From IMG/VR virus record IMGVR_UViG_3300042305_001773, positions 1-64,000 of that record: 64,000 bases of DNA; one strand, 5' to 3'. Shown here piece after piece: positions 25,225 to 60,357 of the stretch. The notes under the pieces were generated by a model. It did no database searches. It saw only the letters and a list, made by a program, of their open reading frames with translations, and had not been told where the DNA came from. The number at the start of each line of letters is the position of its first letter. Within the stretch, counting starts at the first letter, position 1. The position numbers were made by a program, and so were the translations under genes.

Positions 25225-25494
25225 TCAGCTTAAACCCATTAAAAACCGCACAAACACAAAAATCCACGCAAGCAAGCCGCTAATAGCAAAAAAAACCACA
25301 ACCGCGCTCAGGCTGACAACACGCCCGAGCTGCTGAATCGGAATTTCGCGCAACAACCGCCACGCTTTGAGGTAATCAATCGCGCCCGGTTGTTTAGGTG
25401 GCTCCGGCGTAGGTTCGGGGTTCGGTTCCGGCGTTACCGGATCTTTTTTACGCCCAAGGAGGTCACGTAATTTATCAAACAGCGCGTTAGCCAT
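25225..25494 (-). CDS. Membrane protein
   Basis: PE-rich linker, C-terminal TM segment. Confidence 0.5.
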   Translation of the reverse strand: MANALFDKLRDLLGRKKDPVTPEPNPEPTPEPPKQPGAIDYLKAWRLLREIPIQQLGRVVSLSAVVVFFAISGLLAWIFVFVRFLMGLS

Positions 25495-46764: not shown

Positions 46765-46802
46765 GTAAAAACAGTTACCAGAGGTAAAAACAGTTACCAG
46801 AG
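46765..46802. repeat. 19-bp tandem direct repeat, 2 copies
   Basis: GTAAAAACAGTTACCAGAG twice. Confidence 0.9.
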
Positions 46803-46855
46803 CGCTGATAGCTAAAAAAACGCTTAGCAGCCGGGAGTGGTTAGCTCCCGGCTGC
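46802..46855 (-). terminator. Hairpin plus T-tract fused to boundary motif
   Basis: GCAGCCGGGAG/CTCCCGGCTGC stem, then TTTTTTTAGCTATCAGC on the minus strand. Confidence 0.7.
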
Positions 46856-46870
46856 GTCTGCGTTCTTCGC

Positions 46871-47485
46871 TCACACTTCGGCGTCGTCGGGAAACAGGTC
46901 GTGTTCCGACCGTTCCCAATCGTTGTCGAAGCAGTTATCCTCGATCAGCTGCTCGAACTCGGCCTCGGCATCGTCTTCGTCTGCGGCGCCGTACAACTCT
47001 TCTTCGAGTTCACGGCGGGCGCGGGCGAAGCGAGCCTTGACCTTTTCCAGACCCTCGGCGTCGGTTTCCTGCACACCGTTGTTGGGGTACAGGCCGCCGT
47101 ACTGGGCCGCGCGGTCTTCGATCCGCCGGAGGTAGACCACAGCGGCACGGTAACTGGTGAACGTTGCGTCCCAGTCGCCATAGCCGTCGTAGTTCGTGCC
47201 TTCGGAGATGTAGAAGAAACCAGCGCGGTCCTCGACGTCGAGCGCAGCTTCGTAGCTGCTGGCCTCGCCATCGGACTTGGCGAGGCAGTCATCGCAGTAG
47301 TAGACGGGCTCCCATCCGAAGGAGTCCGTTTCACCTTTTACGATGACAGTCGCGTCGTTTGTGCACAGGCAGTTGTAGCCCTCGCACTTTTCGGTGGCGA
47401 CGACGAAAGTACCACCGGGGCCGGCTCCGAACTGCAAGGTTTTGCCATTGTCAGCGGGGATGCGGGCCTTAATCGTCAGTGCCAT
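46871..47485 (-). CDS. Acidic putative early protein
   Basis: AGGAG RBS; own promoter and terminator. Confidence 0.7.
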   Translation of the reverse strand: MALTIKARIPADNGKTLQFGAGPGGTFVVATEKCEGYNCLCTNDATVIVKGETDSFGWEPVYYCDDCLAKSDGEASSYEAALDVEDRAGFFYISEGTNYDGYGDWDATFTSYRAAVVYLRRIEDRAAQYGGLYPNNGVQETDAEGLEKVKARFARARRELEEELYGAADEDDAEAEFEQLIEDNCFDNDWERSEHDLFPDDAEV

Positions 47486-47565
47486 GGTTATCTCCTTTGG
47501 AGGTTATGGCGATGAAACGGCTGGAGACACAACACGTGGCTTACCAGCAAAGAGCTAGGCTCCTT

Positions 47566-47598
47566 ACTAGATATACCCGGTTTTGGCCGTTTATTTAG
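47566..47598 (-). promoter_or_regulatory. Phage promoter P1
   Basis: CTAAATAAA-N14-TATATCTAGT. Confidence 0.75.
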
Positions 47599-47601
47599 AT
47601 A

Positions 47602-50199
47602 TCAGCGCCCGGGCTTGCCGGCCGGCTGTTGTCTGGCCGCGGCGTCAGCTTTAAAGCCGCCCAGTGTCTTCTTGCCATAGTGCGCGAGCAGAGGCGCAGA
47701 AGACGCCAGCATGTACGTGGGCAGGCCAATGAACGCCGACCGGCCGCCCTTGAGCTTCATCTGGCGCATGAGCTTGGCGCCCCGACGAGACGCATCAAAC
47801 TCAGACGCTAACATCGGCATAGAACCGACTGTGCCCGCAATCGCCGAGTTCCGAGAGTTGTCCTCGTTGTTTGAAAGCAGCGCGCCGGCCGTACCTAATC
47901 CAAGCGCGGGCCGGCCGATTTGATTACCGCGCATGAGCCACTTGCCGCCCATGTGGTGTCCCAGCTCGTGCGCCAAAACACCCGGATTTTTCATTCGCCA
48001 GATGTGCCCAATCGTGGGTTTTGATATCCCGATTCCCGGATTCGCTGGTGTATAAAACGCTGGAGAATTACGCACAATATCAGCAGCTGACCGGCGCATT
48101 CTGTACTTGATGTTATTCATGAGATCGCCAATCCAGTTGCCCGTTGTTTTAGGCGCTATTTTCGGGTCAATCTTGCTGGCGACGGTCAAATTATCTACGA
48201 CATCTACGCCCTGACTCTTCGCGTAGTCACTGATTTGCTGCCACGCTCTGTTCCTTTCCATCGTTACCGGGGTGTCAAACAATTCAGGGCGCGCCACACG
48301 GTTCATGTACGCAGTTAATGGCAAGCCAATCGCAGCATTTGTCGCGGGCATGCCACCGAGATACCAGCCCATCGAGTGCCCTAGACCGGGCTTAGCGGGT
48401 TCTTTTTTTTTAACTTCGGCTGCGCTTTTTTTACCAAAGCGCGCGGCAAAATCTGCGGGCGAGACCGGGCGCAATTGAAACGGCGCGGCGGGTGTAGCGG
48501 GTGCTGGGGTTGCTGCGGGCGGGGCTGGTGGTGCAGTAACCGGAGCTGCCGGGCGCTGAACAACCGGCGCAGGTTTAGCCTGCGGCGCAACAACCGGGGC
48601 CTGACGAACTGCTTGAACTGGCGCTGGTTTCGGCTGGGTTACGGCGGGGGCAGCAGGGCGTGGCGTCGGGGCTTGTGACGGCAAGCTCGTCGCGGCACCG
48701 CGTTGACTCATGTAAACGTCGCGCATTTTTTGATAAGTTTGCATTTTTTGCCATTCCGGCACGCCGTTGTTTACGTTTACCACATTCTTCATGTAGTTAG
48801 TGAGGTCTGCGGACGTGGGTCTGGCGGGCATCTTGAACGCTGTCTGCGCGGCGGCGGCCACCGGCTTTTTCGCAACCCCGCTGACCGCTTTACCGGCCAT
48901 GCGACCAATTGAGCCGAGTAAACCGGCCAGCTTCTCGCCGCCGACAGAATTAGCCGTCCCAAACGCTGCGTTACCTGTAATATCACCCGTCGAAGACAAC
49001 GCGCCGTATGAATTAATGGGATTGGCGTTGGGAGACGATCCGCCGCCAACAGGGGGTAGTTGGCCAGACGGGGCCGGGGAGCCCATGTTTGCTGGCTGGG
49101 CGGCGGGAGCCTGTGGTTGGGCCTGTGGCGCCTGTGCCTGCATGCCCATAGGCAGCGGCGTACCCATCGCAGGCATGGCGTAACGTTTAATTCCGGCGTT
49201 TGCAGGCATGCGGGCAGCCTCTCGGGCCTCAATTTCAGCCCTTTCATTCTCTATCGCCTGCATAATGGGCTGCGACAAAACCGCTGAGATCTTCGCTAAC
49301 AAGGGATTTATTACGTTATTTGGCTTTGTTTCCGAGTTACACCTTTCGCCCTTGGTTTTGACGACCTTGGGTGGATTTTCGCCTGCAACTGTTGGCTTAT
49401 CACTGGCCGGCTGCTCGATATAGACCTCTTTAGTATCCGCTTGCTTGGATAATTTCCTGTAAATATCGAGGGCTACAGAGTTTACAGCCGATTGTTTATA
49501 AGTTGTCATATTGGGTTTATTTGCAAAGGCTGCGTTAATGGGGGATTGGCTTGCGGTACCGGTGACATGGGGCAAAAACCCGACAACTCCACCAACACCA
49601 AGGTTCATGACACCGTTTGCGACCCCGATACCCTTCTCTAATGTCTCGGTGGGGAGTTCGCCGTACTGTGTGACATAGCGCTGGGTCTGATTCTGAAGCT
49701 GCTGGACGTCATTGAAGGCTTTAGTGGCCTTGTTGACGGTACTTTTATTAACGCCAGCGATTGTTTTAGGTAGTTTCGCGTTTACGAGCTTATCGGAGAG
49801 TTCTAATTGGCGCGCAGACAGAACAGCGGCGTTTGGGAGGCGCTTGAGTAGCCTGTACGAGCGCATGGGGTTAAAGAACAGCACGCTTTCCCTTGCCGCG
49901 TTGTTAAATAACTGCTGCAACATCGGCGAGCCAACCCGTTTTGATAGCATTCCGGCAGCTGCAAGGCCGGCGGTTGTGCCCAGAGTGCTTAATCCGGCGG
50001 CAGCGGCAGTGTCTCGGGCTGCGGCACCGGGAGAAAAGTCGGCTTTTTTGCTATCTGTATCTGACTCGGGCTCTTTTTTACTGTCAGACGCGTACATGGG
50101 GAGTTTCTTTTTGGTCGGATACTCATGCGCCCAGCGTTTAGCGATCTCTGGATGCTCGGCCCACAGAAACCTACGCTGTTTTTCAGACTTAAACGGCAT
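47602..50199 (-). CDS. Putative virion polyprotein with C-terminal Zn-metallopeptidase
   Basis: MPFKSEKQRRFLWA N-module; KKA, KQSA, KQA, KLA and KSA sites; LAHELGHH...EFDAS. Confidence 0.65.
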   Translation of the reverse strand: MPFKSEKQRRFLWAEHPEIAKRWAHEYPTKKKLPMYASDSKKEPESDTDSKKADFSPGAAARDTAAAAGLSTLGTTAGLAAAGMLSKRVGSPMLQQLFNNAARESVLFFNPMRSYRLLKRLPNAAVLSARQLELSDKLVNAKLPKTIAGVNKSTVNKATKAFNDVQQLQNQTQRYVTQYGELPTETLEKGIGVANGVMNLGVGGVVGFLPHVTGTASQSPINAAFANKPNMTTYKQSAVNSVALDIYRKLSKQADTKEVYIEQPASDKPTVAGENPPKVVKTKGERCNSETKPNNVINPLLAKISAVLSQPIMQAIENERAEIEAREAARMPANAGIKRYAMPAMGTPLPMGMQAQAPQAQPQAPAAQPANMGSPAPSGQLPPVGGGSSPNANPINSYGALSSTGDITGNAAFGTANSVGGEKLAGLLGSIGRMAGKAVSGVAKKPVAAAAQTAFKMPARPTSADLTNYMKNVVNVNNGVPEWQKMQTYQKMRDVYMSQRGAATSLPSQAPTPRPAAPAVTQPKPAPVQAVRQAPVVAPQAKPAPVVQRPAAPVTAPPAPPAATPAPATPAAPFQLRPVSPADFAARFGKKSAAEVKKKEPAKPGLGHSMGWYLGGMPATNAAIGLPLTAYMNRVARPELFDTPVTMERNRAWQQISDYAKSQGVDVVDNLTVASKIDPKIAPKTTGNWIGDLMNNIKYRMRRSAADIVRNSPAFYTPANPGIGISKPTIGHIWRMKNPGVLAHELGHHMGGKWLMRGNQIGRPALGLGTAGALLSNNEDNSRNSAIAGTVGSMPMLASEFDASRRGAKLMRQMKLKGGRSAFIGLPTYMLASSAPLLAHYGKKTLGGFKADAAARQQPAGKPGR

Positions 50200-50416
50200 G
50201 GCGTAGCTCAAACGATAGTGAACTCAGAGGAATTCCCGGATAGTTGGAGTTCGAACTAGTCGGAAAAACCTACGAGTTGGGCGGCGCGGCTGTTCCCAAG
50301 CTGAATACGCCCCATTTTGGCATACAAGGGCTGAGAAGAAAAGGGCGCTCGACGCGTCTGATACACTAGAGGGTGGCTTGGGGAATGCAATCAGGCGTTT
50401 CGACAAGGAGGTCGCC

Positions 50417-50746
50417 ATGAAAGTTCTAAGAATTATGTTATTTAGCCTGCTGTGCGTGCTGAATACGGGACTAGCCTGCGCCGATACCGTGTTAATGTTC
50501 TCCGCAGAATGGTGCAAATACTGCCAGATCGCCAAAAGGGATCTCTTGGAGAACAAAGACGAGGTGGCAGAGTGGAATGTTGAGGTGGTCGATGCTGATG
50601 CGAGCCGAGAAATGGTGCAGCAGTATGGCGTGAAAACGCTCCCGACGTTTATCTATCTAAATGACGCCGGGGAAGAAGTCGACCGGGTGGCTGGCTATAA
50701 GGGCTACAACCGGCTGAAGCGCTGGGTCGAGCGAAATAAGCGCTGA
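50417..50746 (+). CDS. Secreted thioredoxin-family protein
   Basis: Signal peptide, WCKYC, LPTF; AAGGAGG RBS; only convincing plus-strand gene. Confidence 0.9.
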   Translation: MKVLRIMLFSLLCVLNTGLACADTVLMFSAEWCKYCQIAKRDLLENKDEVAEWNVEVVDADASREMVQQYGVKTLPTFIYLNDAGEEVDRVAGYKGYNRLKRWVERNKR

Positions 50747-50844
50747 TATCTAAAGAAAGCGCTCGCAGCCCCGGGGCTTAGGCGGCACCCGGGGCTGCAA
50801 TACGCTTCCGCGCAGCAGTTAAGTTATTAACTACTGCGCACACA

Positions 50845-51501
50845 TCAGGTCGTCGCCGTGGCGAGGGCGGTGGCGGCCTTCACGGCCCGCCGGCCCTTGC
50901 TGTTCTTGATCGCCGTGGCGCGGGCCTTGGCGATCTCCTCTTTGTCCACACCCGCTGTGAAGAGGGTGTAGCAGGTCTCGGCGAGGACGCCGGCGGTGAC
51001 CGCGCAGGTGAGCACGCTCACCAGCTTGGCCGTGCCGACCGTCGCGCCAGCAGCGACCGCGAGGCCGCCGATGGTCGAGCCGACGATCACACCGCCGGTC
51101 ACGGCAACGCCGATGGCCGCGGCGCCGCACAGGATCTTGATGGCGTAGGTGTTCACCTTCAGCCAGTCCACGCTCTTCGTCGAGACGAGGTTGCGGACAT
51201 AGGCCAACGCCAACTTGGCATCCCCGGCGGCGCGCTTCATCTGGGTACCGATCCACGAGACGACCGAAGCCGCCCATTCGTAGATGGTGCTGAAGATGCG
51301 CCCCATGAACTCCCAGACCGACCGCCCGACCGCCAGCAGCGAGTCGAGCAGATTGTCGAGGGAGGAACCGAGACCCTTGCCGGCCGTCTCGCAGAAGCCC
51401 GGCTCGCGCCGCGGTGCTCGGGTGATCTTGCCAGTCTTGGACTTGGCTTTCACACCAGCGTGACCACCGACAGCGGGAGCAGCAGAAACTTGAACCGTCA
51501 T
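50845..51501 (-). CDS. Putative early membrane protein
   Basis: Hydrophobic Gly/Ala segments; own promoter and terminator. Confidence 0.65.
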   Translation of the reverse strand: MTVQVSAAPAVGGHAGVKAKSKTGKITRAPRREPGFCETAGKGLGSSLDNLLDSLLAVGRSVWEFMGRIFSTIYEWAASVVSWIGTQMKRAAGDAKLALAYVRNLVSTKSVDWLKVNTYAIKILCGAAAIGVAVTGGVIVGSTIGGLAVAAGATVGTAKLVSVLTCAVTAGVLAETCYTLFTAGVDKEEIAKARATAIKNSKGRRAVKAATALATATT

Positions 51502-51594
51502 CGCAACCTCTTCTTTCTATGGAGAGGAGTAAAGCTACACCTTACCCGGGTAACATGCGGGAGTATCGACAACACGCCGATACCAGAGAGGGTC

Positions 51595-51627
51595 ACTAGA
51601 TATACCCGGTTTTTCGGGTTTATTTAG
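51595..51627 (-). promoter_or_regulatory. Phage promoter P2
   Basis: CTAAATAAA-N14-TATATCTAGT. Confidence 0.75.
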
Positions 51628-51630
51628 TTA

Positions 51631-52140
51631 TCAGCCGTCCACGGTCTCCAGCGCGGGGGTGTTCTTGCTTCCCACGCGCATGTAGACCGCTTCCACCTGC
51701 AGTTCCGCTGCAGCCCGGACGTCGGCGACTTCCCTGCGGAGGTCACTGACGTTCTGCTGGATGGCAACCAGCATCTTGGCGATGTCCGACAGGCTCAGCT
51801 GATTGTTATCAGCCGGCGCTTGCGGATTGATCACCGAGAGCGTGTCCACCACCGACTCCAGCGCAGTCGTCACGGTCTCCGTCATCTCGGCGCGGGCGCG
51901 CTGTTCCCACGTCGCGATCATCTGCTTGGTCTCGGCCGCGTGAATGAACACGGCGCCGATACCCGCCTCGCTCGCCCGGCGAATCAGCTTGTACGCCGAC
52001 AGCTTGCCTCTTCGCTGCGCCGTCGACAGGTACTGCAGAATCGTCGACCGCTTGGGGTAATCCGCCGGGACCGCGTCGGCCAGCCGGATATACCCTGCGG
52101 GGACAGCATCAACACTCGTCACGATCTGTGCGCCATTCAT
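51631..52140 (-). CDS. Hypothetical protein, possible DNA-binding plus coiled coil
   Basis: AAGGAG RBS. Confidence 0.6.
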   Translation of the reverse strand: MNGAQIVTSVDAVPAGYIRLADAVPADYPKRSTILQYLSTAQRRGKLSAYKLIRRASEAGIGAVFIHAAETKQMIATWEQRARAEMTETVTTALESVVDTLSVINPQAPADNNQLSLSDIAKMLVAIQQNVSDLRREVADVRAAAELQVEAVYMRVGSKNTPALETVDG

Positions 52141-52219
52141 GCGCTCGTTCTCCTTAACAGAAAGATCCAGACCACACCCTGAAAACACATCAGGGCGTTC
52201 CCGGCGGCTGATTTAGATA

Positions 52220-53362
52220 TCAACCTAGAGACCGGGTCTTTAGCACCAGCTTTTCCTGCGCGGGCCATAACAGCATCTGCTGCATGGTGTCCGTGCTGGT
52301 GACATCCTTGAGCAGCTTGAGGGCTGCCTGCGGATTCGCCTGTATTACCTCGGGAGCTGGCTTCTCTTCTTTGCACGCCCGAGATAAGTCTTCATACCGC
52401 GTATACGTATCCCACACCCAATCCTCGCCGTTCTCGGGGTTGTGTTTTTTCAGCTCCCCGGTCACGTAATGATTGGTTTGCACAAGGCCGTGTTTCCTTG
52501 TGCGAATGTAGGTATGTTCCCCGGTATGTGTTACGACCGCGTGTTCTTTACTCTCGGTACCGACCACGTGCGCGAAGAATGGCACCATGGTTTGCTGCGT
52601 ACGGAGATGAAAGACAAGCTTCTCGTAACTTGGCATCTTGTCGCAGACTGCTCGGACCCGGTGTAACGCAGGCCACGCTTGGAGCAGGTCTTTAACAGAT
52701 GCCGCGGTGTTTGTCACGTAGGCAAACGCCGAAGTTAACGAACGCCACCAGCTCGTGTCTGTGTCGTCTTCGTCTTCTTCTTCGACGAGCGACTTCACAA
52801 TCGGAGCTTGGTTGACCACCAGCCCCCACTGGTCTGACATCGCGCTGACGACGCCCACCATGCCCGCTACGCCCACCGAAGTGTAGCTTTTGCGGCCACG
52901 ATGAAAGCGAATCAGCTTGGTGTGCTTCCCAGTGGAGGGAGGCGTCACCCAGTCCATGTTGCGCACAATGACTGGGCTAGAATTCACATCGAAGCTGGCG
53001 GAACTGCAGCCACAACCATACATCTCTGCGAGAGACGTAAAGTCGTAGATTAAGTTTCCCAGCAGGAGCTTGCCGACAGGAACTTCGGCGTGCCGCGCAA
53101 TGCACTGAAGTTCCTGCGGATACTCAAGGTCTGTACCCGTAAGGATCCAGCCCCCGAGTCGTCCGCCGCCGCTTGTCACGCTCTTTACGACACTTTTCAT
53201 GGTGTCAGAAAGGTGTGGCAGGATTTCCTCGTCGACATGGGTTTCCACGTCTTCAAGGATGGCCTGAATCGCGTCGCCGTTCTGACGCGCGAATCCAGCC
53301 CAGCGTTCGTCTGGAGGAGCATCCAGATCGATGTCGTGAATCTTCCCGGTGTAAAGTTTCAT
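52220..53362 (-). CDS. Acid ceramidase/NAAA-like Ntn hydrolase
   Basis: IDLDAPPDERW, nucleophile GCSS, RNMDW, VQTNH. Confidence 0.8.
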   Translation of the reverse strand: MKLYTGKIHDIDLDAPPDERWAGFARQNGDAIQAILEDVETHVDEEILPHLSDTMKSVVKSVTSGGGRLGGWILTGTDLEYPQELQCIARHAEVPVGKLLLGNLIYDFTSLAEMYGCGCSSASFDVNSSPVIVRNMDWVTPPSTGKHTKLIRFHRGRKSYTSVGVAGMVGVVSAMSDQWGLVVNQAPIVKSLVEEEDEDDTDTSWWRSLTSAFAYVTNTAASVKDLLQAWPALHRVRAVCDKMPSYEKLVFHLRTQQTMVPFFAHVVGTESKEHAVVTHTGEHTYIRTRKHGLVQTNHYVTGELKKHNPENGEDWVWDTYTRYEDLSRACKEEKPAPEVIQANPQAALKLLKDVTSTDTMQQMLLWPAQEKLVLKTRSLG

Positions 53363-53757
53363 GACTCGGCCTGCTCTTTCTTGGGCTTGGGCGACAGACC
53401 GAAGTCGTCGTCTTGGCCCGGAAAGGGGACAGGGATGTCGAGCTTGGCACAGCACTGCGCGACCAGATTTTCCAGCCGCTCGATGTACGCCAAGTGCAAC
53501 GCAGCCCGAGCGTCCACGATTTTTTGGAAGCGTTCTTCCAGCAGCCGTCGTGCGACCATCAGCTCTTCCGCTGACACGAGACTCAGCCGCAACCGATTAG
53601 TCGCTTCTTCGGCTTGCTCGATCCGCTCGAAGGCTTTGTTCAGCGTGACGGTTAGAAAACCGACCACTCTGCCCAACTCTTCGACCCTGTCCTCTGCCGG
53701 CTTCGACGGGTCTTCCGGCAACCACTTGTTGATGTCCGTCTCAAATGTCTGGCTCAT
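53359..53757 (-). CDS. Coiled-coil hypothetical protein
   Basis: AAGGAG RBS; ATGA coupling to the next gene. Confidence 0.65.
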   Translation of the reverse strand: MSQTFETDINKWLPEDPSKPAEDRVEELGRVVGFLTVTLNKAFERIEQAEEATNRLRLSLVSAEELMVARRLLEERFQKIVDARAALHLAYIERLENLVAQCCAKLDIPVPFPGQDDDFGLSPKPKKEQAES

Positions 53758-53826
53758 CGGTCATTCTCCTTGGCCGCGCAAAGCGGCGAAAAGACACAGA
53801 ACACCCCGACACACTACCGGGGTACC

Positions 53827-53859
53827 AGTAAATATGACGCGAATTACGCGTTTATTTAG
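53827..53859 (-). promoter_or_regulatory. Phage promoter P3
   Basis: CTAAATAAA-N14-CATATTTACT. Confidence 0.7.
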
Positions 53860-53919
53860 CTGCCGCTGATAGCTAAAAAAAGCGCCCGCAAGCGGCGGTC
53901 AAACCTGCGGGCGCTCTGC

Positions 53920-54144
53920 CTACTGGGCCGAGAGGGTAGTCCACTCGCCGCTGTAGGTCTCTTCCAGCGGATTGATGATCCGCGGCTTGGCTGCGTGGGA
54001 GACAGGCTTGGCGACAGAACGAGGCGCCGTGAGCGGAGCCGTCATTCTGTGCTGCATGTCGCGCCACGCCGGCGAGGGTTGGAGCTTGTCAGAGATCCAG
54101 CCGATCGCCGCAAGACCGCCAAAGATCATGAGGGCCGTGGTCAT
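53920..54144 (-). CDS. Small membrane protein
   Basis: N-terminal TM segment; own promoter and terminator. Confidence 0.6.
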   Translation of the reverse strand: MTTALMIFGGLAAIGWISDKLQPSPAWRDMQHRMTAPLTAPRSVAKPVSHAAKPRIINPLEETYSGEWTTLSAQ

Positions 54145-54208
54145 GGCTATTTCCTTTCCTATTAAGCACGACGGGCAAAGCGTAATTTTTGGCTTACGCC
54201 TATCCGTC

Positions 54209-54241
54209 ACTTAATATGACCGGAAATAGCATGTTATTTAG
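54209..54241 (-). promoter_or_regulatory. Phage promoter P4
   Basis: CTAAATAAC-N14-CATATTAAGT. Confidence 0.65.
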
Positions 54242-54329
54242 TGCGCATCCAGATGATGATATCTAAACCCGTATCTTCTTCTTCGTCGTCGTATTCGGTG
54301 GTCAGGATGTTGGGGCCGGCGTAATTCAT
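54234..54329 (-). CDS. Small acidic ORF, 31 aa
   Basis: MNYAGPNILTTEYDDEEEDTGLDIIIWMRTK; AGGAGG RBS. Confidence 0.4.
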   Translation of the reverse strand: MNYAGPNILTTEYDDEEEDTGLDIIIWMRTK

Positions 54330-54435
54330 CTGTACCTCCTGACGACATAAACGCAGAACGTGGCGCAATTATACGATTTTGATAACACGTCCCCTATTCT
54401 GTAAGAAAAAGCGATCAAATTTCTTACAACTAATT

Positions 54436-54520
54436 GACGTAACATATTGATACATAAGGACTTAGAGTATCTAAGCTTTTCTTGGTTGTTCTAAGTCCTT
54501 ATTTGACAGGTAGTTACGTC
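54436..54520. repeat. Pair of inverted 31-bp sites in an AT-rich gap
   Basis: GACGTAAC-N10-ATAAGGACTTAGA at 54436-54466 and its reverse complement at 54490-54520. Confidence 0.75.
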
Positions 54521-54764
54521 TAATAGCTAAAAAAAGGAGCGGCTGGCTTGTGCCGTGCGCGCTCCTGAGAACCGCTCATTACTGAACGGCTCTTGTTTGG
54601 AGGGCGCATGGCCCACCTCCTTTCTGCTGAAAGGTAAAAAACCTCGCCGGGAATTGCACCCGGCCTGCCACAAGCTTTTAAGGCTCGCTGTCGCGCACCG
54701 AACGTGGGCGACTGGCAGTGTCTCTAGTGAGATTCAGCCGCGTGGCCACGCAGCTTGACTAGCT

Positions 54765-54992
54765 CTAGACGGACTCGAACTCGGCGTCGATGACAGTGCA
54801 GTGCTCGAACTCGTCATCGTTGAGAATCGCGCGCTCGGCCGGAATGCACTCGCACACTCCGATCTCGCGGTGGCAGTGACAGCAGCGCTCTGTGTCGGTG
54901 TCGGGCACCGGCATTGCAAGCGCCACCATCCAATCCCGGTAGTCGTCCACGTTGACTTTGACCTTCGGGTTATTGCGCAACTGAGCCATCAT
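54765..54992 (-). CDS. Small Cys-containing hypothetical protein
   Basis: AAGGAGG RBS; CCHC..CEC. Confidence 0.6.
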   Translation of the reverse strand: MMAQLRNNPKVKVNVDDYRDWMVALAMPVPDTDTERCCHCHREIGVCECIPAERAILNDDEFEHCTVIDAEFESV

Positions 54993-55161
54993 CTCGTCCT
55001 CCTTGAGGAGATAAAACGCCACCGTTCTCGTTGGTGGCCTACGCTTGCAGGTCGTCTGCAAGACCGCCCTGTTAGACCCGAACAGGAGACAGGTAGGGAT
55101 TGCTTAGCGAGTACGTAAAGCACGTGGCTATACCACGGCCGCGGCACCGCTATAGGTCCCT

Positions 55162-55194
55162 ACTAGATATGCCCGCTTTTTTGGGTTTATTTAG
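55162..55194 (-). promoter_or_regulatory. Phage promoter P5
   Basis: CTAAATAAA-N14-CATATCTAGT. Confidence 0.75.
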
Positions 55195-55306
55195 CTGGGC
55201 CGGGATAGCTAAAAAAAAGCCGGCAGGGGAGCGCACCCCTGCCGACTCTTGGCGAATTAACGAGTCGCCACCCGTGCCGAAGCGACCAACCGGTCGCCAA
55301 AAGAAT

Positions 55307-55657
55307 CGTTAGCACATGTCATGCCTGTAAGGACAGGTATCACTACCCGCCTACGGTCTGCAGCCGTTTGTTAGGTCACAGACAAACAGGTGGTGTACGG
55401 CCACTTGTTTTTGTTATTTAAAACTAGTCTGGCAGGTCTTTCACCTGCACCGCTCGCTCCCCTAGCCATAATGTTAGCGTAGTCGAACGGAGTCGCTTGT
55501 AGTAGCCACGAGGCCCGGGCGGGGCTGCCCGCTACTACGTAATCTACCCTAACGGTTCCTGCAAAACATTTCACCGCGCCTGCTCGTTACAAACGCGTAC
55601 GTGCACCTAGAGATAGGTTCATACACACGCTTCTTACAGGCATGACATGTGCCAACG
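55307..55657 (-). ncRNA. Large structured ncRNA candidate, about 350 nt
   Basis: 27-bp terminal inverted repeat with 2 mismatches; internal stems GTAGTAGC/GCTACTAC and GCAGGT-GAAAG-ACCTGC. Confidence 0.6.
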
Positions 55658-55681: not shown

Positions 55682-55966
55682 CTACGTCAACGTGTCAATA
55701 TAGTGCTGTAGGGCACAGGCATGACGCGTGACGATATCCTCGGCTTCGCTTCCGGGGCACTTCTGATCCAGCTCTTGGACCAGACTGACAACTGAACGCC
55801 GAATGTTTAACAACGCCCGGCGCAGTTGTTTCACTTCCACCTCGGTGTCAGTTTTGTATCTATTCCCTTCCTTCGTCGTCACCATCGGTTCTAGCGCCTC
55901 CTTCTTGTGTACAACCTCGTCCCACCACTGATTGTTCCACTTCACTGCTGCCGGTCTCGCTGGCAT
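55682..55966 (-). CDS. Hypothetical protein
   Basis: ORF track; AAGGA RBS. Confidence 0.55.
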   Translation of the reverse strand: MPARPAAVKWNNQWWDEVVHKKEALEPMVTTKEGNRYKTDTEVEVKQLRRALLNIRRSVVSLVQELDQKCPGSEAEDIVTRHACALQHYIDTLT

Positions 55967-56135
55967 TGGTTTCCTTTTTTAACTCTTCAAACGTTAGCTC
56001 TGTGACACGATCGACAAGATCGTTCGCAAGCCCGTCAACCCTGCGGCGAAGATAGTTGATCTTTGATTCCATCTCCGCTAGCTCGTCTCTGGTTTTAATC
56101 AGACTTCTGACCAAGTCAAGCATGTAGCTGCTCAT
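55860..56135 (-). CDS. Coiled-coil hypothetical protein
   Basis: ATGA coupling; AAGGAG RBS. Confidence 0.55.
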   Translation of the reverse strand: MSSYMLDLVRSLIKTRDELAEMESKINYLRRRVDGLANDLVDRVTELTFEELKKETNASETGSSEVEQSVVGRGCTQEGGARTDGDDEGRE

Positions 56136-56428
56136 GTCGGCTCCTTCAGGTCGTCGAGCGTTGTCTTCAAACCAAAACCACGATCGGTCAGATATCGCCC
56201 GACCAGATCGCCGACATCCATGACGCTCAGGTTTTCATACACCCGCTGCGACTCCGTCGGGCTGTATGCGCCAAAGCACGTCACCTTCAGCATGATGGGT
56301 GATCCATTGTCAGTCACTTCGATATCCTCGATGTGCCCCAGCTGGTCGCCCACCATGCCGTCTTCCAGCGCGTGATTGCAGGCGTCACGCAGCGCCTCCA
56401 CGAACCAACGAACTGTGTGCTTGCTCAC
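56132..56428 (-). CDS. Hypothetical protein
   Basis: GTGA-coupled start VSKHTVRWF. Confidence 0.55.
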   Translation of the reverse strand: MSKHTVRWFVEALRDACNHALEDGMVGDQLGHIEDIEVTDNGSPIMLKVTCFGAYSPTESQRVYENLSVMDVGDLVGRYLTDRGFGLKTTLDDLKEPT

Positions 56429-56712
56429 AGCGCCGCCTCTTTGGGTTTGGGATTCGCCTCGTTCTCCAGCTGCTGCCGGATCTGGTACATCCGGTCGATC
56501 AGCAACTCGGCCACGCCGCCGTGAGTTGAACACATTTGCAGGAAGTCCATCACCTCGGGCATGAGCGCCGTGAACGCCAGCACCGCCTCGTTGACCGTGG
56601 CGTGGTTGTGGAACTCCAGCAAGGTATTGCCGGTCTTGGGGTCTTCCACCCAGCCGCGTAGATGGGCCGGCGTGGCCTGACTTCCGAGCGGTTTGAGCCG
56701 AATATTGAGCAT
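56425..56712 (-). CDS. Hypothetical protein
   Basis: ORF track; operonic. Confidence 0.6.
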   Translation of the reverse strand: MLNIRLKPLGSQATPAHLRGWVEDPKTGNTLLEFHNHATVNEAVLAFTALMPEVMDFLQMCSTHGGVAELLIDRMYQIRQQLENEANPKPKEAAL

Positions 56713-56730
56713 AATTATTCCTCTTTAAAA

Positions 56731-57390
56731 TCACCCGATCGGTCCAATTGCCTGCTGCACGCGAGCAGGCAACACGACGTACTTCAGCATATTGATAGCT
56801 TTGTAGTCGTAACCTTCGACCTTCGGTTCTTCGTAGTTCAGCAGCCACAAAAACGGCTGATGAAACCAGTTGGCCAGAAAATGCCCGTGCTCGCGCAACT
56901 GCTTGAGATGCGTGAGTAGTCCTTCCCGGCCGTCGTAATATCCGGCCCACACCATCGTGCCGTCGGCCATCTCTTCGTATTCGCCAGATGACGTGTACTG
57001 ATACGCGCCATCCAGACTGGTCGGCACCCAGTTGTAATACACCTGAATTTTGTTAACAACAAATCTGTGGTTCATCTCAAACGATTCAGACGTTAACAAT
57101 AAGCCGGCTGGGTGCCACCAAATTTCGAACACATCTTCCGCGTAGTTGTGCGTCTCGTGGTATACCTTGTCAAACCCGTTGCGCTCAAACAGCTGCTGCG
57201 CGCCGGCGTAGCTCATGCTGAAGTGCGTGTCGCCCAACACAGAAAGCGCGTCTTCTTTTTCCTGCGCCAGCTGCTGCATCATGACAATGCCCAGCTTCGT
57301 GGCGTCATCACCGGGGCCGACGATCTTTTCTGCCTCGTCAAGCGTATCGCGCTTCAGCAGCTCCAGCGCATGTGTTTCCAATGCGTTCAA
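56731..57390 (-). CDS. Hypothetical protein
   Basis: 219 aa; AAGGAG RBS. Confidence 0.65.
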   Translation of the reverse strand: MNALETHALELLKRDTLDEAEKIVGPGDDATKLGIVMMQQLAQEKEDALSVLGDTHFSMSYAGAQQLFERNGFDKVYHETHNYAEDVFEIWWHPAGLLLTSESFEMNHRFVVNKIQVYYNWVPTSLDGAYQYTSSGEYEEMADGTMVWAGYYDGREGLLTHLKQLREHGHFLANWFHQPFLWLLNYEEPKVEGYDYKAINMLKYVVLPARVQQAIGPIG

Positions 57391-57393
57391 TTT

Positions 57394-57612
57394 CTACTCC
57401 TTTGTGAAAAGAAACGTATCGTTCACCAATTCAATCTTTGACGGCATGTTTGTATTGTTAACAAGCCGTACACTTGGGTCGTCCACCATCTGACCGTTGA
57501 TCTTGCACCGACCCGTCACAATCTCGCGCCGAATCAACGACTCCGGCATGTCTGTCTTTGTCGCCAGCCAGTCCACGAGCGACACCCCGACAATCGGCTC
57601 TGCTTCGCTCAT
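57394..57612 (-). CDS. S4-like RNA-binding small protein
   Basis: IRREIVTGRCKINGQMVDDP resembles an S4 motif. Confidence 0.5.
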   Translation of the reverse strand: MSEAEPIVGVSLVDWLATKTDMPESLIRREIVTGRCKINGQMVDDPSVRLVNNTNMPSKIELVNDTFLFTKE

Positions 57613-58226
57613 TAGTCCCACAACCCCTGATAGTACTTACCGAACAGAGTCGTCCCGCGGCGGATACGCTCCTCGTGGGCTTTCAAACCTTCGATATCGA
57701 CCTTCAAATTGCTGTAGTGCTTTTCAAAGTTATCAATATCGGCCAGCTCCTCGCGGCCAGTGTAAAACGGGTCGTCGTGGTCTGGGTCATTGAGCTGTTC
57801 AAACGCCCAGATCATTTCGCCTAAAATCCAGTTCCACCGCGCCTCGTGGTTAGCGTCGGTGGGGTCGTAGCGCTGCTCTTTCGCTGTACGAGGCGTGGCA
57901 GCTGTTGACCGAAGCTCTTCAGGCACATCGTCGTCGTCCGTAAACGGGCTGCCATGCTGGGTATCCCGCAGCTGCTTGAGCAGCGGCAGGATAATTGGCG
58001 CCAGCGTGGCATCGACACTCCACGTGTCGTAGTAGTGGAGTTTTATGACTTTCTTCTGCTCGCGGAACCGACCATGAAACCACTCGCAGAACGGGCCGAA
58101 CCACGTTTTGTTCAAGCGTTCGCCGAGCTTGTCGCAGCGGTCTTCCGAAAAGCCGACGTACTGCAGCAAGTTTGCCAGCTGATATGGACCCCACCATTTC
58201 TTGGGCGGGCCGATGTAAACTTTCAC
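57612..58226 (-). CDS. Phage hypothetical protein
   Basis: YDTWSVDATLAPII..., LFGKYYQGLWD. Confidence 0.7.
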   Translation of the reverse strand: MKVYIGPPKKWWGPYQLANLLQYVGFSEDRCDKLGERLNKTWFGPFCEWFHGRFREQKKVIKLHYYDTWSVDATLAPIILPLLKQLRDTQHGSPFTDDDDVPEELRSTAATPRTAKEQRYDPTDANHEARWNWILGEMIWAFEQLNDPDHDDPFYTGREELADIDNFEKHYSNLKVDIEGLKAHEERIRRGTTLFGKYYQGLWD

Positions 58227-58525
58227 GATGCACTCCTTGCGGGTTTACTAAATCTTGGAAACGCGTGCTTACAGTCCGGGCACATCCAGTACGAAACACC
58301 GTCGTAGTGATCTGGATGGTCGTAGGGCAACTCGACGCCAATGATGCGCGAGAATTTGTGCGGCGGCGGATAGCACTCTTGAATGTACGCCCGCAACTCG
58401 TCGTCACTCTTGTCCTTGCACCAGTCCTGCGGGCGCAACACGTCAAAGATATCTCCGGCGCACCAGTTAGCGCCGCACTCGGGACACCGACCGTGGTGAT
58501 CAAGTTTTAGAGGTTCAACTGACAT
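58223..58525 (-). CDS. Zn-ribbon hypothetical protein
   Basis: CPECG...YDGVSYWMCPDC. Confidence 0.65.
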   Translation of the reverse strand: MSVEPLKLDHHGRCPECGANWCAGDIFDVLRPQDWCKDKSDDELRAYIQECYPPPHKFSRIIGVELPYDHPDHYDGVSYWMCPDCKHAFPRFSKPARSAS

Positions 58526-58784
58526 TTGCAGCTCCTTCTTCTTTGGGAAGCACTACGTAGTTATCGACTCCCGGCAGCAGCATCAGCCGTCTGCCGTTAT
58601 CCCACGCGACACCAATCTGATGCCACTCTTTTGGCCCGTCCATATTGACAAGCGTTATCGTGCCCTCCAATCCCGCAGACATGCCCTCTTCTTCAGGCAT
58701 CCACGTCGAGTTGGCATTAATCATTTTGCTTAGCAGTCTTATCCGCCGGCCTACTAACGGATGATCTTGTCCGTCCAGAATCAT
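58515..58784 (-). CDS. DUF4314-like protein
   Basis: GRRIRLLSM-like start, GLEGTI, QIGVAWDNGRRLMLLPGVD. Confidence 0.6.
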   Translation of the reverse strand: MILDGQDHPLVGRRIRLLSKMINANSTWMPEEEGMSAGLEGTITLVNMDGPKEWHQIGVAWDNGRRLMLLPGVDNYVVLPKEEGAANVS

Positions 58785-58794
58785 GACGCGCTCC

Positions 58795-59097
58795 TCACTC
58801 GGTTTCGCCAAAATCACACAGATCTTCCAGCGGCACGCGCGCGCCGTACCCGGTTTCTTTTGTCAGATCCTCAGTGATACCCACGTCGCCAAAGCGCGAA
58901 ACCATCACAATTTTGACGCGGGTACCGGCTGGGCACATGACCTTATCAAACTGCGGTTCGTTGCCAACCCACCTCTGTTTGTAGTTCCACATCTCCACGG
59001 GTTTGCGGAGCGTGGCAAACTTGTACTGCCACGTGTCGGGCTTGTGCGGCACCCAACCCTGATCCATCGCGTGTCCTTCCAGCGTTTCAGCAGGCAT
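58795..59097 (-). CDS. Hypothetical protein
   Basis: AAGGAG RBS. Confidence 0.6.
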   Translation of the reverse strand: MPAETLEGHAMDQGWVPHKPDTWQYKFATLRKPVEMWNYKQRWVGNEPQFDKVMCPAGTRVKIVMVSRFGDVGITEDLTKETGYGARVPLEDLCDFGETE

Positions 59098-59265: not shown

Positions 59266-59466
59266 AAACAACGTTGTGCTCAGGTATGCTAGCTGGCACG
59301 GGATATCGGTCTTGGGGCTCGGGCATACCATACCACCCTAGTTTCCTAATCCGCTACGTTGTGTGTTCTAAATGCCGATGCTGGGCACTACTCCAGCAGT
59401 TTTAATCGCGTGCTCGGCATTCACACACACGACGATAAAGGGCAACGCTAGCTAGTCGTGCCCTCA

Positions 59467-59807
59467 TGGAGGCGGCGGGAATCGAACCCGCGTCCAGAAT
59501 GGTTTCCACGTAAACGTCTACATCGTTAGCGCGTTGTTCTCACACTACGCGCAAAGCCAGCCGATTATCGGCGTCAGGTGGGCTACCACCATCTTTGGCT
59601 GTCTCTCCAGCCTGTCCGCCGTCTTCCCGGCTTCCAGCGTGATGGGCGATAACGTCACGCGCGTTACCCGGTCACTGCTCAGGCAGCGAGAGCGGGGACA
59701 CTGTTGAAAGTGCCAATTAACATGTAATCGATTTTTATGCTGGCCCTTCGATCAACCAGCCGATGCAATCTACGCTTCTCTCCATCTGTCGATACCAGTA
59801 CGCCCCC
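59467..59807 (-). ncRNA. ssrA: tmRNA; tag (A)GTFNSVPALAA*
   Basis: GGGGGCG/CGCCTCCA acceptor with G3-U70; GGACGCGGGTTCGATTCCCGC T-arm; tag ORF ending ALAA-TGA. Confidence 0.93.
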
Positions 59808-60031
59808 TTAAGTTGTTGGCTGTATTCCCATTGTGAGCTTACGGCGGGTAGACCCGCCTTCATTTACCGCTGGCTCTTTTGTACGTAATTTATCCAGCAG
59901 CACCAACAACTAAATCGAAAAAGCCTCGCCGCAGGGCTGTGGTCATATCGAGTATGTTGTACCCTCCCACAATTTAAGGTAGTTAACTTTCCCCTGCATT
60001 TCGCAGCGCTGTACACACGCTGCCGAGACAA

Positions 60032-60105
60032 TAACCCGGGTGGGAGTCGAACCCACAACAAGTAGATCCTAAGTCTACCGCCTCTGCCAGTTGGGCTACC
60101 GAGTT
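60032..60105 (-). tRNA. tRNA-Leu(UAG), short variable loop
   Basis: Cloverleaf; GTAGA-CTTAGGA-TCTAC. Confidence 0.88.
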
Positions 60106-60109
60106 ATAT

Positions 60110-60182
60110 TGACCCCACGGGGATTCGAACCCCGGTAAACGGAACGAAAATCCGTTGTCCTAGGCCACTAGACGATGGGGCC
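60110..60182 (-). tRNA. tRNA-Glu(UUC)
   Basis: Cloverleaf; ACGGA-TTTTCGT-TCCGT. Confidence 0.9.
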
Positions 60183-60190
60183 GCGTGCGC

Positions 60191-60331
60191 CTAAGTATTG
60201 TCCGCGCACTCTTTCTTTTCAAGCAGCCGCTCTGTTTTCCAGAACAGACGCTTTCCGAACTTCTTCATGTGCTTGTTCCAGCCCATAATTTTTGGGCGCA
60301 CATGCAGCAGTCCGCGCTTTTTTGTGGTCAT
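60191..60331 (-). CDS. Small basic protein, 46 aa
   Basis: MTTKKRGLLHVRPKIMGWNKHMKKFGKRLFWKTER...; AAGGA RBS. Confidence 0.5.
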   Translation of the reverse strand: MTTKKRGLLHVRPKIMGWNKHMKKFGKRLFWKTERLLEKKECADNT

Positions 60332-60357
60332 GCTGTTCCTTTGATAACAAAACCCAG

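What the first reader, a model, noticed from the sequence alone, without database searches (positions are those of the whole stretch)
46802..55218. Gene cassettes bounded by an inverted GCTGATAKCTAAAWAAA motif that merges stop codon, promoter and terminator
Seen: motif on + at 46806, 50744, 53867, 54257, 54521 and 55203, and on - at 47604, 51633 and 52222 (partial at 53860, 54241, 55195). Unit 46802-47608 has a 21-bp terminal inverted repeat with 2 mismatches (GCGCTGATAGCTAAAAAAACG vs GCGCTGATATCTAAATAAACG). One end supplies the promoter upstream box; the other supplies the terminator T-tract after a hairpin. The motif TGA is the stop codon of four flanking genes (47602, 50746, 51631, 52220). 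Inference: either integron-like or invertible self-contained expression cassettes, or one protein site used for both initiation and termination. No recombinase gene is visible in the window.
Basis: partly seen in the sequence, partly recalled or inferred. Interest (0 to 1): 0.82.

Follow-up and report, generated by a model that had tools for sequence, protein, structure and literature searches.

The report
Shuffled promoter-terminator gene cassettes in jumbo phage
A repeated 17-base motif marks the promoters and terminators around small accessory-gene units in an uncultured 205-kb phage that encodes its own RNA polymerase, and related phages have gained, lost and moved these units with breakpoints at the motif, much as described for PeSL elements of T4-like phages.

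Summary
GCTGATAKCTAAAWAAA occurs 7 times (at most 2 mismatches) against 0.01 expected, and six of the seven copies lie in 46.8-55.2 kb. Nearly all genes are on the minus strand. Read on that strand, the motif is the shared A/T-rich edge of two signals:
- **Terminators (five):** a strong GC hairpin, T7-8, then AGCTATCAGC.
- **Promoter-like elements (five):** (GCTGATAK)CTAAATAAA-N15-ATATYTAGTG. They do not match the sigma-70 consensus.

The window is the first 64 kb of a 205-kb IMG/VR jumbo-phage contig that encodes a fused beta/beta' RNA polymerase.

About ten relatives keep the same elements, but gene content differs. One cassette is absent from the IMG/VR relatives, two are extra, one is replaced or missing, and a two-gene block with 19-bp inverted ends has moved. 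In all these cases the junctions fall inside motif copies. I found no inversion at the motif and no recombinase among the roughly 70 window ORFs scanned.

The best reading is portable promoter/terminator cassettes shuffled by short-homology recombination, a new variant of T4 PeSLs.

One result was unexpected. The terminator tail T7-AGCTATYAGC is conserved across a wide clade of phages with this polymerase, spanning GC 38-61%. A dedicated protein site is therefore not excluded.

The parts
55201..55250 (-). Terminator T5: hairpin, T8, tail AGCTATCCCGG. It ends the upstream non-coding RNA unit.
   Evidence: Fold -28.4 kcal/mol, z -5.75. Called terminator-like by the scan. Conserved in relatives.
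55162..55194 (-). Promoter-like element P1: CTAAATAAA-N15-ATATCTAGT
   Evidence: Repeat families D1/D2. Duplicated in L010, where the two copies flank an extra small cassette.
54765..54992 (-). Cassette gene: 75-aa Cys-rich protein
   Evidence: Translation. Homologues in L029, L010, L057 and L093.
54519..54570 (-). Terminator T4: hairpin, T7, tail AGCTATTAGA
   Evidence: Fold -19 kcal/mol, z -4.6. In relatives the hairpin is replaced but the T-tract and tail are kept.
54209..54241 (-). Promoter-like element P5 (class 2: ...CCGGTCATATTAAGT). The stop codon of the 31-aa micro-ORF 54234-54329 lies inside it.
53920..54144 (-). Cassette gene: 74-aa protein (g96)
53865..53917 (-). Terminator T3: hairpin, T7, tail AGCTATCAGC. 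It is a junction of the translocated block in relatives.
   Evidence: Fold -26.7 kcal/mol, z -3.5. In L010 and L057 homology switches from window 53864 to 50768.
53827..53859 (-). Promoter-like element P2
   Evidence: Homology in L010, L057, L093 and L108 begins at 53859-53861.
52220..53757 (-). Two coupled genes: g132 (53359-53757) and an Ntn-hydrolase-like protein of 380 aa (52220-53362). Their stop and start overlap as ATGA.
   Evidence: Pfam AAT / NAAA-beta hits. Coordinates read.
51637..52222 (-). g185 cassette (gene 51631-52140), flanked by direct copies TGATATCTAAAT and TGATAACTAAAT. Absent from L029, L010, L019/L085, L057 and L108; present in L150 and L148.
51595..51635 (-). Promoter-like element P3 with the full motif. 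The g185 stop codon lies inside it.
   Evidence: Footprint in 9 orthologues: the block from GGCTGATA to TGA is nearly invariant while the flanks diverge.
50845..51501 (-). Cassette gene g218 (218 aa, hydrophobic C-terminal half)
50742..50806 (-). Terminator T2: hairpin, TTTCTTT, tail AGATATCAGCGC. On the plus strand the same bases hold the thioredoxin stop codon.
   Evidence: Fold -37.3 kcal/mol, z -5.55..
47590..50758 (.). Two-gene block X. It holds a thioredoxin-like gene (50417-50746, plus strand) and an 865-aa protein with an HELGH motif (47602-50199, minus strand). It is bounded by a 19-bp inverted repeat and sits at a different motif junction in most relatives.
   Evidence: Inverted repeat I5, 95%. 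Pfam Thioredoxin. Position in relatives. HELGH.
47566..47606 (-). Promoter-like element P4 with the full motif. The stop codon of the 865-aa gene lies inside it. Its leader is 94% identical in L010, where different genes follow.
46871..47485 (-). Cassette gene g204. Replaced by two other small genes in L010; the whole cassette is absent in L032/L057 and L108.
46804..46862 (-). Terminator T1: hairpin, T7, tail AGCTATCAGCGC
   Evidence: Fold -26.6 kcal/mol, z -5.9..
25279..25335 (-). Terminator of the same design outside the cassette region (T8, GCTATTAGC). Relatives have the exact motif here.

Best explanation
The motif is not one site. It is the common A/T-rich edge of two transcription signals of a phage whose genes run on the minus strand. 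A unit starts with a promoter-like element: an optional GCTGATAK that often holds the stop codon of the preceding gene, then CTAAATAAA, a 15-nt spacer ending in CCGG, and ATATYTAGTG. A 65-170 nt leader follows and opens with a hairpin. A unit ends with an intrinsic-type terminator: a GC hairpin, T7-8, then AGCTATCAGC. The A-rich upstream box of the promoter is almost the reverse complement of the T-tract plus tail, so every unit looks as if it has terminal inverted repeats, and each terminator-promoter junction is a loose palindrome. The promoter-like elements do not fit sigma-70. They are most likely read by phage-specified transcription machinery; the phage encodes a fused beta/beta' RNA polymerase. 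The repeated signals also act as portable regulatory cassettes. Recombination between copies in the same orientation (terminator with terminator, promoter with promoter) has deleted, inserted, replaced and transposed the genes between them while leaving each gene with working signals. Shown: the motif copies and their statistics, the hairpins, the conservation, and the breakpoints. Inferred: promoter activity, which polymerase reads it, and the recombination pathway.
For: - **Motif enrichment and families:**
- **Terminators:** five strong hairpins abut the T-tracts.
- **No sigma-70 promoters at the elements:** only one sigma-70-like site lies in 46-56 kb, and it is not at any of them.
- **Paralogue and orthologue conservation:** 33 non-redundant promoter copies from the window and relatives share both boxes at fixed spacing. 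In nine orthologues of P3 the block from GGCTGATA to TGA is nearly invariant while coding and leader flanks diverge.
- **Window identity:** it is IMGVR_UViG_3300042305_001773 positions 1-64000. ORF 13344-17747 carries Rpb2 and Rpb1 domains, and ORF 10484-12364 carries Rpb1 domain 5.
- **Breakpoints against relatives:**
  - The g185 cassette (51637-52210) is missing in L029 with a 15-bp overlap inside the motif.
  - A 550-bp cassette is extra in L029 between two terminator tails.
  - A 275-bp cassette is extra in L010 between two promoter copies.
  - Block X lies between 53864 and 53861 in L010, L057, L093 and L108, but between 50744 and 47598 in the window.
  - The P4-g204-T1 cassette has other genes in L010 and is absent in L057 and L108.
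- **Mechanism fit:** excision by terminator-terminator exchange followed by reinsertion by promoter-promoter exchange predicts exactly the chimeric promoters seen. Window P2 has a junction-type upstream part on the L010 Pa body, and P4 has the GCGCTGATA upstream part on the L010 Pb body.
- **Patchy distribution of g185:** it is present in L150 and L148, whose Ntn-hydrolase gene is 85-86% identical to the window's, but absent in L029 at 91%.
- **Published parallels:** PeSL elements have the same layout of stop codon, AT-rich box, promoter and stem-loop, and the same role in hyperplastic regions (PMC2839356; PMC4122927). Jumbo-phage early promoters are AT-rich blocks of about 10 nt near -10 (PMC7598289).
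Against: - There are no transcript data, so the promoter call rests on position and conservation only.
- The leaders are long, and the element is a quasi-palindrome (CTAAATA ... TATYTAG), which would also suit an operator.
- Shared sequence at some crossovers is only 9-19 bp, which is short for ordinary homologous recombination.
- In this region almost every intergenic space holds a motif copy, so viable breakpoints would fall there anyway.
- The neighbouring 55.7-58.8 kb also gains and loses genes without any motif.
- The terminator tail is conserved far beyond what recombination or termination by hairpin plus U-tract needs.
Confidence: 0.62

Rival explanations
1. The 10-17 nt core (AGCTATCAGC with its A/T run) is the binding site of one phage protein, either a polymerase subunit or a separate factor. 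Placed after a hairpin and T-tract it helps stop or block the polymerase. Placed inverted just upstream of a promoter it helps start. This would resemble Reb1/TTF-I sites at both ends of rDNA units.
For: Terminators found from hairpin and T-run alone carry AG[CA]TAT right after the T-run in 22 of 26 cases in family loci and in 5 of 6 strong cases in the window. The exact 17-mer T7-AGCTATYAGC hits at least 120 IMG/VR stretches (capped), against 16 for a scrambled tail. Carriers span GC 0.38-0.61, and many share only a 35-55% identical RNA polymerase with the window. A few copies lack a hairpin, for example two of three in L200. In orthologues of P3, GCTGATA is kept although the preceding codons differ, and L150 has a full forward copy with no ORF in front of it.
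Against: The forward GCTGATA part is missing from the three promoters that follow a terminator directly (P1, P2, P5). The distance from the tail to the promoter box varies from 7 to 10 nt. The promoter-orientation copies were seen only in the close family, while the terminator-orientation copies are clade-wide. No candidate binding protein was identified.
Confidence: 0.17
2. The motif is a site for a dedicated site-specific recombinase or nuclease, giving a phage cassette-exchange system analogous to an integron. Block X and the small units would be true mobile cassettes with terminal inverted repeats.
For: All cassette-scale rearrangements have junctions inside the motif, some within 9-12 bp of shared sequence. 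Block X keeps 17-19 bp inverted ends wherever it sits. Terminator-promoter junctions are loose palindromes, for example TTTAGCTATCCGGGCTGATATCTAAA in L150.
Against: No integrase, resolvase or transposase family matched any of about 70 window ORFs; only two HNH endonucleases were found. There are no target-site duplications. No inversion between the many inverted copies occurs in ten genomes. The cassettes have their own promoters, and the sites bear no likeness to attC. Every junction is explained by exchange between same-orientation copies. The motif also occurs at a terminator in the conserved gene block at 25.3 kb, which shows no rearrangement.
Confidence: 0.08
3. The promoter-like elements act mainly at other levels. 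On the plus strand they read as a short hairpin followed by TTTATTTAG-TATCAGC, that is, weak copies of the family terminator that stop antisense transcription. In read-through RNA, the inverted ends of a unit could pair into a duplex of about 20 bp for RNase III processing.
For: The simple scan calls 51604-51619 and 55171-55186 terminator-like on the plus strand. The ends of the g204 unit could form a 21-bp duplex with 2 mismatches.
Against: The spacer hairpin is weak or absent in many copies (0 to -10 kcal/mol), and its right half is invariant while the left half drifts, which points to sequence rather than structure. Only one plus-strand gene exists to produce antisense RNA. Long inverted ends exist for only two units.
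Confidence: 0.08

Closest known systems
PeSL (promoter-early stem-loop) regulatory cassettes of T4-like phages (Arbiol et al. 2010, PMC2839356; Comeau et al. 2014, PMC4122927)
   Same: Both are composite intergenic motifs that combine the upstream gene's stop codon in an AT-rich stretch, a promoter and a stem-loop or terminator. Both are concentrated in a hyperplastic region in front of small genes of unknown function. In both, insertions, deletions and replacements between close relatives are bounded by the motif, and each shuffled gene keeps its own signals.
   Different: The host genome is not T4-like; it is a jumbo phage with its own multisubunit RNA polymerase. The promoter does not match sigma-70. 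The terminator is a separate strong hairpin with a clade-wide invariant tail AGCTATCAGC. The promoter's upstream box is the reverse complement of the terminator tail. Shared sequence is shorter (about 17-45 bp against about 100 bp). Mini-circles are untested.
Early promoters of jumbo phages that encode multisubunit RNA polymerases (phiKZ, AR9; PMC7598289, PMC8244752)
   Same: Both are conserved AT-rich blocks of about 10 nt near -10 with an A/T-rich upstream part. Both are found bioinformatically in front of many small operons and do not match the host consensus.
   Different: The sequence is unrelated. This element has two boxes and is quasi-palindromic. The polymerase here is a beta/beta' fusion whose closest isolate is the orphan Salmonella phage Arash at 33% identity. 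No transcript mapping exists.
Integron gene cassettes with attC sites
   Same: Both are arrays of small, mostly same-direction genes separated by imperfect palindromes at which cassettes are gained and lost.
   Different: No IntI-type recombinase was seen. The sites are unlike attC. The cassettes carry their own promoter and terminator instead of depending on Pc. The element is in a lytic-type phage genome.
Morons of lambdoid phages
   Same: Both are extra genes flanked by their own promoter and terminator, inserted between neighbouring genes.
   Different: Morons do not share one repeated boundary sequence, and they are not arrayed.

Membership tests
PeSL-type regulatory cassettes | Repeated intergenic motif that combines a promoter with a stem-loop or terminator | tested here: met
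   Five promoter-like and five terminator copies in 8.4 kb, three of them as direct terminator-promoter junctions. Promoter activity itself is inferred.
PeSL-type regulatory cassettes | Concentrated in a hyperplastic region, in front of small genes without known function | tested here: met
   Within the 64-kb window, the promoter copies occur only in 46.8-55.2 kb. Most genes there have no Pfam or PHROG family. Gene content varies among ten relatives.
PeSL-type regulatory cassettes | Insertions, deletions and replacements between close relatives are bounded by the motif | tested here: met
   Five cassette-scale events, about 11 of 12 junctions inside motif copies. Caveat: other indels in the region and next to it are not motif-bounded.
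PeSL-type regulatory cassettes | Promoter matches the host sigma-70 early consensus | tested here: not met
   The sigma-70 scan finds no site at any of the five elements. The boxes CTAAATAAA and ATATYTAGTG do not resemble TTGACA and TATAAT.
PeSL-type regulatory cassettes | Carried by a T4-like myovirus | tested here: not met
   No match in 50,697 phage records at nucleotide level. The nearest isolate by RNA polymerase is the unclassified phage Arash at 33%. The phage encodes its own beta/beta' polymerase.
PeSL-type regulatory cassettes | Excised mini-circles carrying one chimeric motif | not testable with these tools
   Needs reads or PCR.
Integron | IntI tyrosine recombinase next to the array | tested here: inconclusive
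   None among about 70 ORFs of the window. The other 141 kb of the genome could not be read.
Integron | attC sites and promoterless cassettes expressed from a common Pc | tested here: not met
   The sites are 17-45 bp regulatory signals. The units have their own promoter-like element and terminator.
Transposon or MITE with terminal inverted repeats | Target-site duplication and a transposase, or a related autonomous copy | tested here: not met
   No duplication flanks 46802-47608 or 47590-50758. No transposase family was found (calls above).
Intrinsic (factor-independent) terminator | GC-rich hairpin directly followed by a T-tract, downstream of a gene on the coding strand | tested here: met
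   Compensatory hairpin replacement with the T-tract kept in relatives.

The most novel reading that the evidence does not exclude
The invariant tail AGCTATCAGC after the T-tract is a sequence-specific signal read by the non-canonical multisubunit RNA polymerase of this phage clade, or by a factor bound to double-stranded DNA. It would be needed for termination or insulation. Its inverted copy at promoters would couple the end of one unit to the start of the next, and could also serve as the address for cassette exchange.
Probability: 0.2. Interest if true: 0.8.

Novelty: new variant of a known kind. Interest (0 to 1): 0.55.

Why it matters
It extends PeSL-type modular shuffling from T4-like phages, which use host sigma-70 promoters, to an uncultured clade of jumbo phages that bring their own RNA polymerase. 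Repeated regulatory cassettes may therefore be a general route by which large phages trade accessory genes. It also provides a ready-made promoter consensus and an unusually specific terminator consensus for a polymerase family whose signals are unknown. Both could be tested directly in vitro or in metatranscriptomes.

Tried and rejected
- **Cultured relatives:** nucleotide searches of the region and of a terminator-promoter junction against 50,697 phage records found nothing, so no cultured close relative is available.
- **Phage Arash:** this is the nearest isolate by polymerase. Its first 50 kb shows no terminators of this design, and its sigma factor has no homologue in the window. I dropped this route.
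- **Rfam:** no family matches at or near the motif.
- **Literature:** the 13-mers appear in no paper of the library.
- **Hairpin-type promoter (N4-like, or a PeSL stem-loop between the boxes):** the spacer stem is weak or absent in many copies, and orthologues keep the right half by sequence rather than by pairing. Rejected as a defining feature.
- **Tail as the upstream half of a promoter with a TATAAT-like -10 box 5-8 nt later:** only about 33 of 138 copies have such a box, while 98 have the hairpin. The tail therefore goes with the terminator first.
- **Inversion at the motif:** none found.
- **Independent movement of g185:** its homologues elsewhere sit at the same locus, so this is presence/absence, not movement to new contexts.
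- **Limits:** Family loci were fetched by the motif itself, so counts in them are biased upward. The window counts are not.
Full report
**What the sequence shows**

The pattern GCTGATAKCTAAAWAAA has 7 matches at up to 2 mismatches in the 64-kb window, against 0.01 expected from shuffles. Six lie in 46.8-55.2 kb and one at 25.3 kb. Almost all long ORFs are on the minus strand, so I read the region in that direction. The motif then resolves into two families, which repeat finder also returns on its own (families D1/D2 and D4/D5).

- **Terminator family.** This is a GC-rich hairpin, T7-8, then AGCTATCAGC. There are five copies, ending at 55201, 54519, 53865, 50742 and 46804. Their hairpins fold at -19 to -37 kcal/mol with z-scores of -3.5 to -5.9.
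- **Promoter-like family.** This is CTAAATAAA, a 15-nt spacer that ends in CCGG, then ATATYTAGTG. There are five copies, at 55194-55162, 54241-54209, 53859-53827, 51627-51595 and 47598-47566. Each lies 65-170 nt upstream of a start codon.
- **GCTGATAK extension.** Where a long gene ends just in front of a promoter copy, GCTGATAK precedes the box and its TGA is the stop codon (ORFs ending at 47602, 51631 and 52220). The fourth stop, at 50746, belongs to the only plus-strand gene, which runs into a terminator tail from the other side.

The A-rich box with GCTGATAK is the reverse complement of the T-tract with its tail. That is why each unit appears to have terminal inverted repeats: 21 bp with 2 mismatches around 46802-47608, and 19 bp at 95% around 47590-50758.

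**What the genome is**

The window is identical to positions 1-64000 of IMGVR_UViG_3300042305_001773, a 205-kb viral contig.

- ORF 13344-17747 (1467 aa) carries Rpb2 domains 2, 3 and 6 followed by Rpb1 domains 1 and 2. ORF 10484-12364 carries Rpb1 domain 5. The phage therefore encodes a multisubunit RNA polymerase with a beta/beta' fusion.
- Its nearest isolate is the orphan Salmonella phage Arash at 33% identity. Arash packages polymerase subunits and a sigma factor in its virion (PMC10585845).
- There is no nucleotide match to any of 50,697 phage records.
- The cassette genes are mostly of unknown function. The exceptions are a thioredoxin-like protein, an Ntn-hydrolase-like protein, and an 865-aa protein with an HELGH motif.

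**Are these really a promoter and a terminator?**

The terminators meet the usual definition, and relatives replace the hairpins with unrelated ones while keeping the T-tract and tail.

The promoter call is an inference from four points:
- Every copy is correctly placed and oriented in front of a gene or small operon, often directly after a terminator.
- Thirty-three non-redundant copies share both boxes at fixed spacing.
- In nine orthologues of P3, the block from GGCTGATA through TGA is nearly invariant while the coding sequence before it and the leader after it diverge.
- The sigma-70 scan finds only one site in 46-56 kb, and it is not at any of these elements, so the units would otherwise have no promoter.

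The AT-rich block of about 10 nt fits what is described for early promoters of jumbo phages with their own polymerases (PMC7598289; PMC8244752).

Pattern and protein searches of IMG/VR returned about ten relatives at 70-95% nucleotide identity that cover this region. All keep the two element families at intergenic positions, but gene content differs:

- **g185 cassette (51637-52210).** It is absent from L029, L010, L019/L085, L057 and L108. In L029 the two flanks overlap by 15 bp inside the motif.
- **Extra cassette in L029.** A 550-bp cassette sits between two terminator tails at the position of 50740-50774.
- **Extra cassette in L010.** A 275-bp cassette sits between two promoter copies at 55154-55195.
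- **The unit between P4 and T1.** It holds g204 in the window and L029 and two other small genes in L010. It is missing in L032/L057 and L108, where one terminator remains.
- **Block X.** The two-gene block (thioredoxin plus the 865-aa gene) lies between the terminator at 53864 and the promoter at 53861 in L010, L057, L093, L108 and L085. In the window and L029 it lies between 50744 and 47598.

A two-step exchange between same-orientation copies explains the last case. A terminator-terminator exchange gives a circle or a tandem duplication, and a promoter-promoter exchange follows. This predicts the chimeric promoters actually seen: window P2 has a junction-type upstream part on the body of the L010 promoter that follows X, and window P4 has the GCGCTGATA upstream part on the body of the other promoter.

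g185 homologues in other assemblies sit at the same locus. They are present in relatives more distant from the window than L029, which lacks the gene. That pattern means repeated gain or loss.

Promoters with about 75 nt of leader are often kept while the gene behind them changes (L010 after P4, 94% identical leader; L148 after P3).

**Limits of that test**

- In this region nearly every intergenic space holds a motif copy, so viable breakpoints would tend to fall there anyway.
- Other differences are not motif-bounded: the replacement of g132 by another small gene, length variation inside the 865-aa gene, and gene indels in the tightly packed 55.7-58.8 kb region next door.
- The shared sequence at some crossovers is only 9-19 bp.
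- No inversion between the many inverted copies was found; the single inversion among the relatives lies elsewhere and has no motif at its ends.
- About 70 window ORFs were scanned against Pfam or PHROGs. None matches an integrase, resolvase or transposase family, and two are HNH endonucleases. The other 141 kb could not be read.

**Comparison with what is known**

The closest described system is the PeSL of T4-like phages. It is a repeated composite of the upstream stop codon in an AT-rich stretch, an early promoter and a stem-loop. It is concentrated in hyperplastic regions in front of orphan genes, and recombination between copies deletes, inserts and swaps genes (PMC2839356; PMC4122927).

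The present elements work like PeSLs and meet three of the defining features. They fail two: the promoter is not sigma-70-like, and the phage is not T4-like. I therefore file this as a new variant of that kind, not a member. It is not an integron in any tested respect except the array-like layout.

**An unexpected extension**

Terminators found in family loci from hairpin and T-run alone are followed by AG[CA]TAT in 22 of 26 cases. The same holds for 5 of 6 strong terminators in the window, including one at 25.3 kb outside the cassette region.

The exact 17-mer T7-AGCTATYAGC hits at least 120 IMG/VR stretches, where the scan stopped, against 16 for a scrambled tail of the same composition.

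The carriers span GC 0.38-0.61. Many have no nucleotide similarity to the window but encode a 35-55% identical copy of its RNA polymerase and other shared proteins.

About a quarter of the copies are followed 5-8 nt later by a TATAAT-like box. In the window's family, CTAAATAAA occupies that position.

The tail is therefore an old feature of this polymerase-encoding clade. It is conserved far more than hairpin-plus-U-tract termination would require.

**Verdict**

The most likely mechanism is portable promoter/terminator cassettes shuffled by short-homology recombination (confidence about 0.6). A protein-site reading of the conserved tail is the most interesting alternative.

Noticed in passing
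window 55215-55657, minus strand: A gene-free stretch of about 430 nt encodes a candidate large structured RNA. It has a sigma-70-like promoter (TTGACG-16-TAGAAT with TG) at 55690-55663, a 25-bp closing helix (55633-55657 with 55307-55331), and terminator T5 at its end. RNAalifold on six relatives gives 151 pairs, 24 of them with compensatory double changes (7 in the closing helix). It has no Rfam family and is better conserved (82-95%) than its neighbours.
   Followed up: partly
IMG/VR loci such as L075, L065, L143, L200, L190, L138, L156, L169: The terminator tail T7-AGCTATYAGC is shared by a wide clade of large phage contigs (GC 0.38-0.61) that have only the RNA polymerase and a few other proteins in common with the window. 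L143 and L200 carry three copies within 1-2 kb, which looks like cassette arrays of their own.
   Followed up: partly
window 46765-46802: A perfect tandem duplication of a 19-nt unit (GTAAAAACAGTTACCAGAG) lies between terminator T1 and the 671-aa gene. Relatives have one copy of the conserved CTCTGGTAACTGTTTT, which may be a different kind of promoter or operator.
   Followed up: no
window 54234-54329, minus strand, and the AT-rich 54330-54518: A conserved acidic 31-aa micro-ORF (MNYAGPNILTTEYDDEEEDTGLDIIIWMRTK) has its stop codon inside promoter P5. The AT-rich spacer before it holds an 11-bp perfect inverted repeat, AAGGACTTAGA / TCTAAGTCCTT.
   Followed up: no
window 13344-17747 and 10484-12364, minus strand: The RNA polymerase genes are a 1467-aa fusion of beta with the N-terminal part of beta', plus a separate 626-aa beta' C-terminal part. 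This differs from the four or five split subunits described for phiKZ-like phages.
   Followed up: partly
window 47602-50199, minus strand: The 865-aa protein has an HELGH motif at residue 744 and a Pro/Ala/Gln-rich middle. Its length ranges from 346 to 865 aa among relatives through internal deletions.
   Followed up: no
leaders downstream of each promoter-like element, e.g. window 53800-53826, 51560-51585, 54170-54205: Each leader opens with a hairpin a few nt after ATATYTAGTG. Stems differ between copies, and loops are often G/U-rich (GTGT). The mean z-score is -1.45 over 30 leaders.
   Followed up: partly
window 55700-58800: A tightly packed run of small genes with overlapping stop and start codons also differs in content among relatives but has no motif copies. 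Junctions lie at gene starts that share short similar N-terminal coding sequence.
   Followed up: partly
window 59464-62102: The phage carries a tmRNA (tag GTFNSVPALAA) and five tRNA genes in a cluster, plus a tRNA-Asn at 27339-27412.
   Followed up: no
window 30273-30977 and 38851-39225, minus strand: Two HNH or homing endonuclease genes. These are the only nuclease-type mobile-element genes seen in the window.
   Followed up: no
L113 8573-8920 (in the gene orientation used; homologue of window 39605-39958): A SprT-like gene is inverted and relocated next to the 865-aa gene homologue in one distant relative, with no motif at the breakpoints.
   Followed up: partly
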